Shown here: piece after piece, positions 38,668-58,622 of the stretch
How positions within the stretch are numbered: the first letter of the stretch is position 1
Layout: each line of letters opens with the position of its first letter
Assembly (NCBI RefSeq): GCF_032191835.1
Contig: NC_083241.1
Location: 1,178,001-1,242,000 of the forward strand
Origin: Heteronotia binoei
Taxonomy: Eukaryota
DNA length: 64,000 nt
Reading direction: 5' to 3'
Translations under genes and position numbers: made by a program
The notes under the pieces: generated by a model
Told to the model about the DNA's origin: nothing
Databases searched by the model: none
The model's input: the letters and a program-made list of their open reading frames with translations, nothing else

Positions 38668-38707
38668 ATGGCGCCCAAGCAGGACCCGAAGCCCAAATTC
38701 CAGGAGG
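38668..38707 (+). CDS. MORF4L1: MORF4L1 exon 1 (MAPKQDPKPKFQE)
   Basis: ATG at 38668, donor GTGAGC. Confidence 0.97.
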
Positions 38708-38927: not shown

Positions 38928-38974
38928 GCGAGCGGGTGCTGTGCTTCCATGGGCCGCTCCTCTACGAGGCCAAG
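38928..38974 (+). CDS. MORF4L1: MORF4L1 exon 2 (GERVLCFHGPLLYEAK)
   Basis: (CT)n tract plus cgcag acceptor, GTAGGT donor. Confidence 0.97.
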
Positions 38975-41626: not shown

Positions 41627-41694
41627 TGCGTGAAGGTGGCCATCAAGGACAAGCAGGTGAAATACTTCATCCACTACAGCGGCTGGAATAAGAA
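41627..41694 (+). CDS. MORF4L1: MORF4L1 exon 3 (CVKVAIKDKQVKYFIHYSGWNK)
   Basis: cctag acceptor, GTGAGT donor, 68 nt. Confidence 0.97.
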
Positions 41695-42754
41695 GTGAGT
41701 GTTTGGTCCCGCCTCCCGTGGCTCATCCAGGCCGTGTCATTCCCCTGCTGCCTGCCCAGGCCTGTAGCTATGGGGGGGAAGGGGGCTTGTGGGAGCCTTG
41801 CCCCTTGACTTCCTGTTGAGTGTCCCAACCGAGATGTTCCTGACCTTCCCTCCTCCTCCCTCCTCCTGCCGCTGCCACAGGGGTGAAAGCTGGGGGCTGC
41901 CCTCTCCCTCCCCTCGTGGTTTAAATTGCATGGGAGGGAGTACCTTGAAGCAGCCTCTGCTGAGGGAGCAGCCTCCTTTAAATGGGATGGGAGGGGCGGC
42001 AGCTGCAATTTAAACCACGGGCTGGGAAGGGGCGGCCCCCAGTTCTCAGCTTTCACCCCTGTGGCCCCTCATGTGGCGGTGGCAGTGGGAAGAAAGGCCG
42101 GGTGCCCTGAGTCGCAGCGGCGACATCCATGACAGGGGAGCCGTTAAGACCCCCCCTGACTTTTGTATGCCTCCCAACTTTTAAATCCTGGCTGTGGGCC
42201 TGTGCCTGCCTGCCTGCCCTCTTCCCTTTCCCATAGCGGAGGGGGCACTGTCTTCCTCAGCTGGCGCTGCTTGCTCCTTCTGCAAGGTGAAGGGAGCCCT
42301 TCCAGGACTGGGAGCAGGCCCCGACCGGACTGTGGCGGGAGCATCCCTCACTCTCTGCCTAGCGTATCAAGGTTAAGTCCTCCTTCCGCTCTGATTGCAA
42401 CATAGCCACCATAACCAACTGTTATCGGCATAGATTGCCACATAAAAGGGCAACAGAATGGGGAAAGACCTCTTTCTGAGGCGTTGAAGAGCAGTGGATC
42501 GCTGACGAGCTTTGTCGGTGCTAGAAGTTCACTGCTACGGTGGGTTCATCAGCTCAAACTCTTTGGGTGAAACGTGTGGGCTGTTGAAACTTGCAAATTA
42601 CACAGGCTTTGAGTTCTAAACTCTCAGCTGGAAGGAAGACTGTTCCTGTCAGTAGGTGAATTGCATGCGGTCGAAGCAAAGTTGGCTTTGTGGAAGTCAT
42701 CAGTTTGCCAACTGGGCATAAGCTCTGAAAACTGTGTTCCTTTTACTTTTTCAG

Positions 42755-42841
42755 CTGGGATGAATGGGTTCCAGAGAGCAGAGTGCTCAAATACGTCGAC
42801 ACCAATCTGCAGAAGCAGAAAGAACTTCAAAAGGCCAATCA
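42755..42841 (+). CDS. MORF4L1: MORF4L1 exon 4 (WDEWVPESRVLKYVDTNLQKQKELQKAN)
   Basis: tttttcag acceptor, GTAAGC donor, 87 nt. Confidence 0.97.
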
Positions 42842-44652: not shown

Positions 44653-44733
44653 GGAACAGTATGCAGAAGGAAAGATGAGAGGGGCTGCTCCAGGCAAGAA
44701 AGCGTCTGGTCTCCAGCAGAAAAATGTTGAAGT
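44653..44733 (+). CDS. MORF4L1: MORF4L1 exon 5 (EQYAEGKMRGAAPGKKASGLQQKNVE)
   Basis: tttttcaag acceptor, GTAAGA donor, 81 nt. Confidence 0.96.
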
Positions 44734-45685
44734 GTAAGAAACTGTCTGTGTCTCTCTTTTTCACTGTTTTTTCTTCCAAGGACAAAACGTTCTAAAAATC
44801 CTGGTGGGCCTATTTGCAAATCTCCAAATTATGCATAATGGGGGACATTACTAGGTTTGGAAAATGTAGCTGATCTTTAGTTACTTCATTGATTAGTGCA
44901 TCTGGTTTAATCTGTAAAGAACTGGATAAAGGCCGAGTCAACAGCTGCTTTGCAAGACAGACCCGTGAGCCACAGAGACCTCACATTTAGGTTCCAGTGG
45001 GAAGGGCTCCCAATTCCATGTCTGGATCAAGGGTTTAAATCCCTTCTACTTGAGTAGGACTTCAGCAGTTAAGCCTGTGCACAGCTTTGTGAGCTCTCAA
45101 GGTATAAGCAAGTGCGTGCATCTTCCCTCAGACCTGACTTGGGTTTGAAGAAGCTCCTTTCCAAATGCATGTTTTTAAGAATGCTGAATTGAAAGGTGTG
45201 CTGGCAAAACAGGTTTCCCTGAAGTCAGATGCCTCCTGGTAATAAATCCTCTAGAGACTTCCAGAGTACAGCATGGTTCTTGAGTGTTCTTTTACTTGCT
45301 AAAAAGCCCCACTGAGTAAACAAGTGTCAAGAGCTGCATCATTCCAATGGTATGACTTCAAAGCGAGCTAGTTGGCTCTCGGGAATTTTAGTGTCTTATT
45401 GATTGGGGGGTGGGTGGGTTGGGCCGCTGGACTTCCATGGCCTTACTTTGGTTTCTGCTTCTGTGGAGGAATAGATGGAATATGCCAACTCTTGAGTCTA
45501 GCTGGTCTTTTTACTACAAGGTGAAAGGGAAGGGGGAAATAGAAATAACACGTTCCAAGCCAAACCGTCCTGCTTCCCAGGGTATGTTGAACAGGGCTGT
45601 AACTTTTAAGCTTAACTGCATTCTCTTAAAGGCTCCGCACGTCAGGTCTGACACTCTCCTTAACTCAACCCCCCATTGTACCTAG

Positions 45686-45748
45686 ATTTTTCAGACGAGA
45701 TGGAGCGCATACAGTTTGCAGTTTGGAGACCCCTGCAATATCGACGCG
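45686..45748 (+). CDS. MORF4L1: Candidate in-frame alternative exon of MORF4L1 (FFRRDGAHTVCSLETPAISTR, 63 nt; 54 nt if the AG at 45693-45694 is used)
   Basis: cctag acceptor, GCG|GTGAGT donor, phase 2-2, no stop codon, CpG-rich relative to the surrounding intron. Confidence 0.65.
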
Positions 45749-46424
45749 GTGAGTTAAGGATGGATTGTCACACCAGGATCTTCATCCTGAAACACCCAGA
45801 TTTCCTTGAGTAGTCACTGAACATCTCTCTTTCAATACAATGTGGTTGTACTGGGGCCCTGTTGTTCCTCCCTGGAGCTTGTTTGAAGAGAAGGAATTGT
45901 GCATTTCCTCACTTGCTAAAGCAGCTCTTGTGGATTCTCAGTCCTGGTCCAAGTTTTTTTTCTTTTAAGAAATCCGCCCTCGGTCACTTGCTGCACATCT
46001 GCCAGTAGCTCAGTGGTGCTGAGGGGAGGTGTCACCCTTTGAAGCATTGGAGTCATGGTAGGCGGCAGATGGCATCGGCAACCTCAGCCTCACACCCTGG
46101 AGGAGGAGGGTGTGGCTACATTTGGATGATTGACAGCCGCCTTATGAGAGTTTTTGCAGTCTCGCTCAGGAGTTTCTAGCCTTAGCTGAAACTGTGCCTC
46201 TTTTTGTGCAGCAGCAAGACACTGGGGGGGGGGGGGGGGAGAGGTCAAGGGAGTTTTTCTGCAAAACGCGTTTTCTTTCGAAGCACCAGTTTGTTGATGG
46301 GGCAGTTTCATGCAGTAGCAGTCCATTCTAAACATGTTGATTTGAGTGAGCTTAAATTGGAATAACCCTGCATCGTTTCTCACTCTTAACATATTTACGC
46401 ACTGCTCTCTCAATCTCTCTCTCA

Positions 46425-46901
46425 GGAGAGCCAGTTAAATGGGCGAACTCTTATGTGGGATTCTTAACCAAGTTTGATTCCCCACTCCTCCACTTGCACC
46501 TGCTGGAATGGCCTTGGGTCAGCCATAGCTCTGGCAGAGGTTGTCCTTGAAAGGGCAGCTGCGGTGAGAGCCCTCTCCAGCCCCACCCACCTCACATGGT
46601 GTCTGTTGGGGGGGGAAGAAGGGAAAGGAGATTGTGAGCCGCTCTGAGACTCTTCGGAGTGGAGGGCGGGATATAAATCCAATATCTTCATCTACCTCAC
46701 AGGGTGTCTGTTGTGGGGGAGGAAGGGAAAGGAGATTGTGAGCCGCTCTGAGACTCTTCGGAGTGGAGGGCGGGATATAAATCCAGTATCTTCATCTACC
46801 TCACAGGGTGTCTGTTGTGGGGGAGGAAGGGAAAGGAGATTGTGAGCCGCTCTGAGACTCTTCAGAGTGGAGGGCGGAATATAAATCCAATATCTTCTTC
46901 A
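46425..46901 (+). mobile_element. Squam3-like SINE with tail module x3
   Basis: ctcacagggtgtctgttgtgggg..gggcgggatataaatcc repeated; junction atcttcatctacctcacagg. Confidence 0.87.
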
Positions 46902-47276
46902 ATTTAAAAAAAATCTCAAGGTGGCTGAAATAAGTTTTTGATTTACTTATGTACAGTGGCAGTAGGGCAGGATGTGTGCAGTTTATTAACTTTGCAGAGG
47001 AAAGAGTCACTTACAACTTGCTGTTCTCTAGCAAACACAAGGCGGCTTCTTTAATGTTCTTTGTCTATCAACACTTATCCCTGTGGCCAGCCTTCCTTTG
47101 AAGTATTGGGCCTGACCAGCCTTGAAGACAAGTGGGGGGTTGCTTGGTTAAATGGCTGTTGGCCGGCACTCTAAAAGGTCTAGTGCTTGAGCTTGAAGGT
47201 ATGAAATGGGGGTTTAAAGAGAGTAGGACTGGGATTATCCTTACACTTGTAATAATGTACTCTTCTCTTTTGACAG

Positions 47277-47302
47277 GAAAACAAAAAAGAACAAACAGAA
47301 AA
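47277..47302 (+). CDS. MORF4L1: MORF4L1 exon 6 (KTKKNKQK), 26-nt microexon
   Basis: ttttgacag acceptor, GTAAGA donor. Confidence 0.95.
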
Positions 47303-49448: not shown

Positions 49449-49537
49449 ATCCTGGAATCGGGGAAGGCAGCAGTACCAGTGAGAACCCTCAGCCTCCCAG
49501 GAAAAAACGGGCTCGAGTAGATCCCACAGTCGAAAGC
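49449..49537 (+). CDS. MORF4L1: MORF4L1 exon 7 (NPGIGEGSSTSENPQPPRKKRARVDPTVES)
   Basis: gcttag acceptor, GTAAGC donor, 89 nt, NLS-like PRKKRAR. Confidence 0.95.
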
Positions 49538-53075: not shown

Positions 53076-53177
53076 GAAGAAACCTTTATGAACAGAGTTG
53101 AAGTGAAGGTGAAAATTCCAGAGGAGCTAAAACCGTGGCTTGTTGACGACTGGGATTTGATCACCCGGCAAAAGCAG
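53076..53177 (+). CDS. MORF4L1: MORF4L1 exon 8 ([34 protein letters not shown])
   Basis: attcag acceptor, GTAACA donor, 102 nt. Confidence 0.97.
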
Positions 53178-54276: not shown

Positions 54277-54365
54277 CTCTTCTACCTTCCTGCCAAGAAG
54301 AACGTTGATTCCATTTTAGAGGACTACGCGAACTACAAGAAGTCCCGAGGAAACACTGATAACAA
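54277..54365 (+). CDS. MORF4L1: MORF4L1 exon 9 (LFYLPAKKNVDSILEDYANYKKSRGNTDN)
   Basis: cttcag acceptor, GTGAGG donor, 89 nt. Confidence 0.97.
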
Positions 54366-54588: not shown

Positions 54589-54761
54589 AGAATATGCTGT
54601 TAATGAAGTTGTAGCGGGCATCAAAGAATACTTCAATGTAATGCTCGGCACCCAACTGCTATATAAGTTTGAGAGACCACAGTATGCAGAGATCTTAGCA
54701 GATCATCCTGATGCTCCAATGTCACAGGTCTATGGAGCCCCACACCTCCTCCGGTTATTTG
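54589..54761 (+). CDS. MORF4L1: MORF4L1 exon 10 ([32 protein letters not shown]...HLLRLF)
   Basis: cacccag acceptor, GTATGT donor, 173 nt. Confidence 0.97.
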
Positions 54762-56235: not shown

Positions 56236-56320
56236 TCCGGATTGGAGCGATGCTGGCTTACACACCGCTTGATGAGAAGAGCTTGGCCTTGCTGTTGAAC
56301 TACCTGCATGACTTCTTGAA
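56236..56320 (+). CDS. MORF4L1: MORF4L1 exon 11 (VRIGAMLAYTPLDEKSLALLLNYLHDFL)
   Basis: ctgcag acceptor, GTACGT donor, 85 nt. Confidence 0.97.
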
Positions 56321-58537: not shown

Positions 58538-58622
58538 ATACCTTGCAAAGAATTCTTCCATGTTGTTCAGCGCAAGCGACTACGAGGTTGCACCCCCAGA
58601 ATATCACCGGAAAGCAGTGTAA
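58538..58622 (+). CDS. MORF4L1: MORF4L1 exon 12 coding part (YLAKNSSMLFSASDYEVAPPEYHRKAV*)
   Basis: gttcag acceptor, TAA at 58620-58622. Confidence 0.97.

What the first reader, a model, noticed from the sequence alone, without database searches (positions are those of the whole stretch)
45686..45748. Hidden in-frame cassette exon adding 21 aa between the chromodomain and MRG domain
Seen: candidate branch ttaac at about 45659, acceptor cctag| (alternative tttcag| 9 nt later), donor GCG|GTGAGT. Phase 2-2, no stop, giving ...KNVEV-FFRRDGAHTVCSLETPAISTR-KTKK... (344 aa, or 341 aa with the downstream AG). Five CpGs in 63 nt in an otherwise CpG-poor intron suggest constraint. Not visible in the ORF track. 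Inference: a real alternative MRG15 isoform located after exon 5, different from the mammalian long-isoform insert that lies in the chromodomain.
Basis: partly seen in the sequence, partly recalled or inferred. Interest (0 to 1): 0.7.

Follow-up and report, generated by a model that had tools for sequence, protein, structure and literature searches.

The report
Conserved 21-residue MORF4L1 linker exon

Summary
Window 45686-45748 lies in intron 5 of MORF4L1 (E5 44653-44733, E6 47277-47302). It is 63 nt, phase 2-2 and stop-free, has 5 CpG, and is flanked by AG and a very strong GTGAGT donor.

Taken alone, this is about what chance gives. Comparison with other genomes settles it:
- The only part of intron 5 that aligns to turtle and bird is 45599-45808, at 86-88% identity.
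- The exon is invariant at 53 of 63 positions in seven sauropsid genomes, with both splice sites kept.
- The same 21 residues stand between KNVEV and KTKK in annotated MORF4L1 isoforms of some thirty lizards, snakes, turtles, crocodilians and birds, for example the 344-aa Anolis X3 and Paroedura X1.
- Platypus and marsupials carry a 19-residue version. A caprine intron 5 has no trace of it.

The exon is therefore real, as old as amniotes, missing in at least one placental, and already annotated.

Three points are added here:
- It splits the published bipartite NLS.
- Its branch site and its 5' splice site form a predicted 23-bp duplex, present in 6 of 7 genomes.
- Its first half is read in another frame in mammals.

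The parts
44653..44733 (+). MORF4L1 exon 5 (ends ...KNVE + GT of the split Val codon; weak donor gtaaga)
45599..45808 (+). Deeply conserved block. It is the only part of intron 5 that aligns to turtle and bird (86-88% identity), and it is 94% identical to the gecko Paroedura against 52-70% for the rest of the intron.
45645..45670 (+). 5' arm of the predicted exon-looping duplex. It covers the branch-like ttaac (45660-45664) and part of the pyrimidine tract.
45684..45685 (+). Acceptor AG used in all annotated orthologous isoforms. A second, invariant AG lies at 45693-45694 and is not used in any protein seen.
45686..45748 (+). Cassette exon: 63 nt, phase 2-2, 21 residues, 5 CpG. 53 of 63 columns are invariant and there are no indels in 7 sauropsid genomes.
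45748..45774 (+). 3' arm of the predicted duplex. It covers the last exon base and the whole donor GTGAGT (45749-45754).
47277..47302 (+). MORF4L1 exon 6, a 26-nt micro-exon and the downstream partner of the cassette.

Best explanation
Window 45686-45748 is the orthologue of a genuine, frame-preserving alternative exon ('exon 5a') of MORF4L1/MRG15. The exon dates back at least to the amniote ancestor. When it is spliced in between exon 5 and the 26-nt exon 6, it adds 21 residues to the linker between the chromodomain and the MRG domain and gives a 344-residue protein.

Shown here:
- the exon and its splice sites are conserved across sauropsids;
- isoforms with and without it are annotated in many species;
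- monotremes and marsupials carry a shorter homologue.

Inferred:
- The insertion point (V108|K109 of the 323-aa form) falls inside the published bipartite nuclear localisation signal KK-x11-KTKKNK. Inclusion stretches the spacer from 11 to 32 residues, so it probably changes nuclear import or other properties of the disordered linker.
- Inclusion is probably controlled by an RNA duplex of about 23 bp. In this duplex the exon's own branch site and pyrimidine tract pair with its 5' splice site and loop the exon out. This would explain why about 60 nt of intron on either side are as conserved as the exon.
For: Gene context. The exons of a complete 323-codon MORF4L1 are in the window.

Conservation.
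- Blastn of intron 5 against turtle and bird intron 5 gives a single hit, 45599-45808, at 88% and 86% identity.
- The identity profile against Paroedura peaks at 0.93-0.98 over 45613-45792, equal to exon 5, against 0.4-0.7 elsewhere.
- In the 7-genome alignment, 53 of 63 exon columns are invariant, there are no indels, and the AG, the second AG and GTGAGT are invariant.

Annotation.
- The word search with exon 5 plus cassette of a Pogona protein returned 20 clusters with full coverage, from lizards, a snake, turtles, a gharial, birds and platypus. Their sequences show the insert at KNVEV|KTKK.
- Among the stored proteins, 47 carry the sauropsid insert, 4 the mammalian one, and 110 the canonical junction.
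- Forms with and without the exon exist in the same species, for example Cariama T1 against T3 and several marsupials.
- The exact 344-aa proteins of Candoia and Liasis and the 342-aa koala protein are also on record from Logan run assemblies. For an uninterrupted 12-exon product this implies a spliced transcript contig (inference).

Coding signal.
- About 7 synonymous and 7 non-synonymous changes were counted, and one four-fold site shows all four bases.
- The length is 3n in both lineages, 63 and 57 nt.

NLS. Residues 96-114 are given as a bipartite NLS in PMC13049774.

Duplex.
- 23 pairs are predicted, 45645-45670 with 45748-45774.
- It is the MFE structure in the window and in turtle, with z -2.0 and -4.3.
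- Arm-to-arm duplex energy is -31 to -37 kcal/mol, z -3.3 to -5.4, in 6 of 7 genomes.
Against: - No RNA read of this species was seen.
- Most supporting proteins are automatic predictions.
- A search for short Logan fragments carrying the junction found none.
- The coding signal is weak. Variable sites by codon position are 4/1/5, all three frames are open, and the first half of the exon appears to be read in another frame in mammals. The peptide as such may therefore matter little.
- The duplex has no compensatory changes (0 of 46 pairs), and Crotalus has lost the upstream arm yet keeps the exon.
- The effect on the NLS is untested, and a second basic motif (PRKKRAR) lies downstream.
- The structure model was too poor to say anything (mean pLDDT 36).
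Confidence: 0.85

Rival explanations
1. The exon is real, but selection acts mainly on the RNA (splice-site pairing and regulator binding) plus a simple 'stay in frame' rule. The 21 residues would be a largely sequence-independent spacer, or the exon would serve mainly to tune splicing of the neighbouring 26-nt micro-exon.
For: - The flanking introns are as conserved as the exon: 70-80% invariant columns over 60 nt on each side against 87% in the exon, without Crotalus.
- All five CpG are retained in most genomes.
- The mammalian peptide matches frame 0 of the sauropsid exon over its first 11 residues and frame 1 over the last 8. The same nucleotides therefore seem to be translated differently.
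- Non-synonymous changes are as numerous as synonymous ones.
Against: - The C-terminal core CLET-x-x-IS-x-R is kept in the same frame from platypus to birds.
- The third-position rate (5/21) is about twice the first- and second-position rate (5/42).
- The length stays 3n and stop-free in every genome and protein seen.
- The frame switch is inferred from peptides only. No monotreme or marsupial DNA was fetched.
Confidence: 0.3
2. The block is a conserved non-coding intronic element, such as a splicing regulator of exons 5 and 6 or an enhancer, that gene predictors wrongly promote to an exon.
For: - Conservation extends into both flanks.
- All frames are open.
- Most evidence is automatic annotation.
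- No reads could be laid here.
Against: - The AG and a consensus GTGAGT are invariant exactly at the ends of a 3n segment in seven genomes.
- Independent pipelines (RefSeq, Ensembl-derived UniProt entries, GenBank submitters) place the same insert.
- Isoform pairs differing only by it exist.
- Exact full-length products with the insert are recorded from Logan run assemblies.
- To my knowledge NCBI's pipeline issues extra isoforms only with transcript support. This was not tested here.
Confidence: 0.04
3. It is a chance AG...GT pair in an intron, that is, a pseudo-exon.
For: The splice-matrix count shows such 3n stop-free pseudo-exons are expected about once per gene. The acceptor is weak.
Against: 86-88% identity over 210 nt between lepidosaurs and turtles or birds, in an intron that is otherwise unalignable. 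The same insert appears in annotated proteins of dozens of species.
Confidence: 0.01

Closest known systems
Annotated 344-residue MORF4L1 isoforms of other sauropsids. Examples: Anolis carolinensis X3 XP_062819243.1, Paroedura picta X1 XP_077173642.1, Eublepharis macularius X1 XP_054858557.1, Emydura macquarii X1, Thamnophis sirtalis X1.
   Same: Same gene, same junction (KNVEV|KTKK), same 63-nt exon. The peptide is identical to the window's in Pogona, Eublepharis, Thamnophis, Candoia and Liasis, and differs by 1-3 residues elsewhere.
   Different: Nothing essential differs. The window is another gecko-like squamate: its exon 5, 7 and 12 residues match Paroedura best. These entries are predictions without a described function.
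19-residue insert of monotreme and marsupial MORF4L1. Examples: platypus F7DT37 / A0A6I8P5L6, koala XP_020831628.1, Tasmanian devil XP_031812619.1.
   Same: Same junction, a 3n length, and a shared C-terminal core CLET..IS.R.
   Different: It is 57 nt rather than 63 nt. Its first 11 residues correspond to another reading frame of the sauropsid exon, which implies about +1 and -7 nt (inferred). No DNA was examined.
MRG15L / MORF4L1 long isoform of mouse and human (39-residue insert)
   Same: It is also an alternative, frame-preserving exon of the same gene that changes the protein's behaviour (PMC13049774, PMC12145428).
   Different: That insert lies after K51 inside the chromodomain, in the intron between exons 3 and 4. 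This one lies in the linker, inside the bipartite NLS. The review lists only 323-, 362- and 235-residue human forms, none with a linker insert.
Alternative exons looped out by complementary flanking intron sequences (conserved long-range RNA structures in pre-mRNA splicing; from my own knowledge)
   Same: Here an upstream intronic arm pairs with a downstream arm so that the exon sits in the loop. The duplex is far more stable than shuffled controls and is present in 6 of 7 genomes.
   Different: Here the arms are the exon's own branch site and its own 5' splice site. Support comes from conservation and energy only, not from covariation or experiment.

Membership tests
MORF4L1 / MRG15 gene | N-terminal chromo (Tudor-knot) domain plus C-terminal MRG domain, with the vertebrate 12-exon structure | tested here: met
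   The exon translations found in the window add up to 323 codons. Pfam on the Paroedura orthologue gives PF11717/PF22732 at 11-77 and PF05712 at 157-333. The exon 10 search hits MORF4L1 proteins at 100% identity.
Frame-preserving alternative cassette exon | Bounded by functional AG and GT sites, with a length that is a multiple of 3 and no in-frame stop | tested here: met
   Both sites and the 63-nt length are invariant in 7 genomes.
Frame-preserving alternative cassette exon | Transcripts both with and without the exon exist | tested here: inconclusive
   In relatives both forms are annotated, and exact products with the insert are on record from Logan assemblies. In the window's own species no reads could be laid.
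Frame-preserving alternative cassette exon | Orthologous exon conserved above the intron background | tested here: met
Poison (NMD-inducing) exon | Inclusion introduces a premature stop or a frameshift | tested here: not met
   63 nt, open in the gene's frame.
Mammalian MRG15L chromodomain insert | 39 residues inserted after K51 within the chromodomain | tested here: not met
   The insert is after V108, outside the chromodomain.
Structured non-coding RNA (e.g. an intronic snoRNA) | Match to a curated RNA family | tested here: not met
   Rfam scan of 44734-47270 at E<=1 gave only an unrelated weak hit at 46570-46690.
Transposon-derived (exonised) sequence | Other copies in the genome or window | tested here: not met
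   There is no second copy of 45300-46100 in the 64-kb window, although the window is rich in SINEs. Genome-wide copy number was not testable.

The most novel reading that the evidence does not exclude
The exon is a self-masking splice switch. A conserved 23-bp duplex between its branch site and its 5' splice site would decide inclusion. Inclusion would pull apart the two halves of MRG15's bipartite NLS and so change import or condensate behaviour of the chromatin reader. The switch would have been kept for more than 300 million years, even though mammals and sauropsids translate its first half in different frames, and then discarded in placentals.
Probability: 0.25. Interest if true: 0.55.

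Novelty: already known. Interest (0 to 1): 0.3.

Why it matters
MRG15 reads H3K36me3 and is a shared subunit of the NuA4/TIP60 and SIN3B complexes. Its isoforms are studied almost only in mouse and human, where this exon appears to be absent.

Non-placental amniotes keep a linker exon of near-exonic, partly intronic ultra-conservation that falls inside the nuclear localisation signal. This means model work in chicken, lizards or opossum deals with an extra MRG15 form that mammalian literature does not describe.

For the scan itself the result is a useful positive control. A reader without tools picked a true, annotated alternative exon out of raw intron sequence.

Tried and rejected
1. RNA reads. 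The look-up of sequencing runs gave RNA runs of a matching species label.
2. Rfam on the intron: nothing found.
3. Repeat origin: no other copy in the window.
4. Splice-matrix statistics, from matrices recalled from memory and therefore rough: the pattern alone is not significant.
5. The look-up of encoding contigs found no record for P0019, P0023, P0185, P0169 and P0186.
6. A word search for short fragments (23-72 aa) carrying the exon 5-cassette junction returned only canonical fragments. A blank here means little.
7. The AlphaFold model of the Paroedura 344-aa form has mean pLDDT 36 and is unusable.
8. The extra 13 residues after the cassette in chicken are not conserved in other genomes.
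9. Literature search: no paper in the library links MORF4L1 to a cassette, poison or ultraconserved exon.
Searches used single exons by reference or database proteins. The only join was a local count of length and frame.
11. No human contig was fetched or compared.

Full report
**Observation.** The window carries a complete MORF4L1 (MRG15) gene on the + strand. I located the exons by short peptide motifs and read their borders.
- The exons are E1 38668-38707, E2 38928-38974, E3 41627-41694, E4 42755-42841, E5 44653-44733, E6 47277-47302 (a 26-nt micro-exon), E7 49449-49537, E8 53076-53177, E9 54277-54365, E10 54589-54761, E11 56236-56320 and E12 58538-58622.
- They sum to 972 nt, or 323 codons plus stop.
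The branch-like ttaac is at 45660-64. The acceptor AG is at 45684-85, with a second AG 9 nt later. The exon is 63 nt, and the donor GTGAGT is at 45749-54.
- The phase is 2-2 and there is no stop. The five CpG are the maximum of intron 5.

**Is it more than chance?** As a pattern, no.
- With rough splice matrices (from memory) the donor scores 5.7 bits. That is better than most real donors of this gene and is matched by only 3 sites in 19 kb of introns.
- The acceptor scores 0.6 (2.4 for the downstream AG), and 166 intronic AGs do as well.
- All three frames of the 63 nt are open. A 3n stop-free pseudo-exon beside a strong donor is expected about once per gene.
- The segment has no second copy in the window and no Rfam match.

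**Reads.** The look-up of sequencing runs offered RNA runs, including three large raw-read runs of a matching species label.
- My single read-laying run included exon 6.
- There is therefore no read evidence for this species.

**Proteins.**
- A search of the representative library with exon 10 by reference returned, among MORF4L1 relatives, two proteins that hold the predicted peptide between KNVEV/KNVDV and KTKK. They are a Pogona vitticeps RefSeq isoform, with the cassette identical to the window's, and a Cariama cristata GenBank isoform with two substitutions.
- A word search with exon 5 plus cassette of the Pogona protein gave 20 clusters with full coverage. These come from lizards (Pogona, Podarcis, Anolis, Hemicordylus, Paroedura), a viper, turtles (Emydura, Lepidochelys, Gopherus), Gavialis, many birds (including a UniProt chicken entry and two clusters of 87 and 123 members) and platypus.
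- The cluster listings add Sceloporus, Zootoca, Lacerta, Gekko, Eublepharis, Varanus, Thamnophis, Crotalus, Candoia, Liasis, Python, Naja, Ahaetulla, Pituophis, Erythrolamprus and alligators.
None uses the downstream AG.
- Forms with and without the insert occur in the same species. In some snakes the insert-bearing form is the only model.
- Three exact full-length products with the insert (Candoia, Liasis, koala) are also on record from Logan run assemblies. For an uninterrupted 12-exon product this implies assembled spliced transcripts. That is an inference, because the contigs could not be fetched.

**Genomes.** I fetched the gene loci of Emydura (L001), Cariama (L002), a caprine (L003), Paroedura (L004), Crotalus (L005), Alligator (L006) and Sceloporus (L007).
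- In all six sauropsids the exon lies in intron 5.
- Of the 2.5-kb window intron, only 45599-45808 aligns to turtle and bird, at 88% and 86%.
- Against Paroedura the intron is 40-70% identical, but 45613-45792 reaches 93-98%, the same as exon 5.
- In the seven-genome alignment the exon has 53 of 63 invariant columns and no indel. Both AGs and GTGAGT are invariant.
- The 60 nt upstream and downstream are 70% and 80% invariant (without Crotalus), against 15-23% further out.
- Exon substitutions number about 7 synonymous and 7 non-synonymous. Variable sites by codon position are 4/1/5, and one four-fold site shows all four bases. This is a modest coding signal on top of strong nucleotide-level constraint.
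- The caprine intron 5 (1.5 kb) has no trace of the element by blastn or tblastn.

**Mammals.**
- A word search with the platypus region found the same 19-residue insert in Tasmanian devil, koala and opossum. The cluster listings add wombat, glider, dunnart, antechinus and wallaby.
- No placental protein had more than the exon 5 part.
- The first 11 residues of this peptide align with frame 0 of the sauropsid exon. Its last 8 align with frame 1, the sauropsid coding frame.
- The simplest reading is one extra base near the start and a 7-nt loss at a short tandem repeat. The frame would be restored (57 against 63 nt), while the first half is translated differently. This is inferred from peptides and was not checked on DNA.

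**How it probably works.**
- The insert lies between the chromodomain (11-77) and the MRG domain (157-333).
- A 2026 review gives residues 96-114 of the 323-residue form as a bipartite NLS. It lists only 323-, 362- and 235-residue human isoforms (PMC13049774). The cassette enters between V108 and K109, that is, between the two basic clusters, and lengthens the spacer from 11 to 32 residues.
- Classical bipartite signals have 10-12-residue spacers, and longer ones work less well (my own knowledge). I therefore infer altered import or linker behaviour. A second basic motif further on may keep the protein nuclear.
- On the RNA side, RNAalifold and RNAfold pair 45645-45670 with 45748-74 in 23 pairs. 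The first arm holds the branch-like site and part of the pyrimidine tract. The second holds the last exon base, the whole GTGAGT and the next 20 nt. This loops the exon out.
- The arm-to-arm duplex is -31 to -37 kcal/mol, with z -3.3 to -5.4 against shuffles, in six genomes.
- Crotalus has flanking introns of only 305 and 127 nt, has lost the upstream arm and keeps the exon.
- There is no covariation, because the arms hardly vary. The duplex is therefore a prediction that would explain the intronic conservation, not a demonstrated switch.

**Verdict.** The exon is real by orthology and annotation and is at least as old as amniotes. It is apparently absent in placentals, on the basis of one genome and the protein survey. 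It is already present in public annotation, although I found no paper that describes it. Its position inside the NLS, the self-pairing of its splice signals and the apparent frame switch between lineages are the only new points, and all three still need testing. The structure model was uninformative.

Noticed in passing
window 45521-45581: The other first-stage candidate in this intron (a 'poison exon', note s1-340914) has AG/GT sites of moderate score (1.7 and 3.3 bits). It is 80% identical to Paroedura and lies outside the block that aligns to turtle and bird, so it lacks the deep conservation of the cassette.
   Followed up: partly
window 46589-46897: A 104-nt unit repeated three times (96% matches) in intron 5, within SINE-like sequence. 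Paroedura has nothing alignable here.
   Followed up: no
window 47277-47302: Exon 6 is a 26-nt micro-exon with the strongest acceptor of the gene (8 bits). Exon 5 has a weak donor (1 bit), and the cassette donor (5.7 bits) is much stronger than either neighbour's.
   Followed up: no
L005 3728-4221 (Crotalus tigris): The introns on either side of the cassette have shrunk to 305 and 127 nt and the upstream duplex arm is lost. In Pituophis and Erythrolamprus the cassette-bearing 344-aa form is the only RefSeq model. The exon may therefore be close to constitutive in snakes.
   Followed up: partly
proteins P0175, P0176, P0180-P0182, P0188, P0204 (junction of exons 3 and 4; window intron 41695-42754): Sauropsid isoforms carry lineage-specific inserts of 10 to 39 residues at the same chromodomain junction where mammals have the 39-residue MRG15L insert. 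Birds, crocodilians, turtles and Sceloporus each have different sequences. The window's intron 3 was not searched for one.
   Followed up: no
proteins P0170, P0171 (Podarcis) and P0020 (bats): A further small insert of 9-11 residues ending in VA follows KTKKNKQK, so there is another alternative segment between exons 6 and 7 in some lizards and bats.
   Followed up: no
protein P0177 (chicken A0A8V0ZJ53); L002 19733-19773: The chicken entry has 13 extra residues after the cassette. There is only a weak partial match in Cariama and none in turtle, alligator, the window or Paroedura.
   Followed up: partly
protein P0213 (MCH1932277.1, 'Shewanella sp.', 319-nt contig): A 106-residue 'hypothetical protein' of a bacterial assembly clusters at 90% identity with vertebrate MORF4L1. 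This is most likely vertebrate contamination of that assembly.
   Followed up: no
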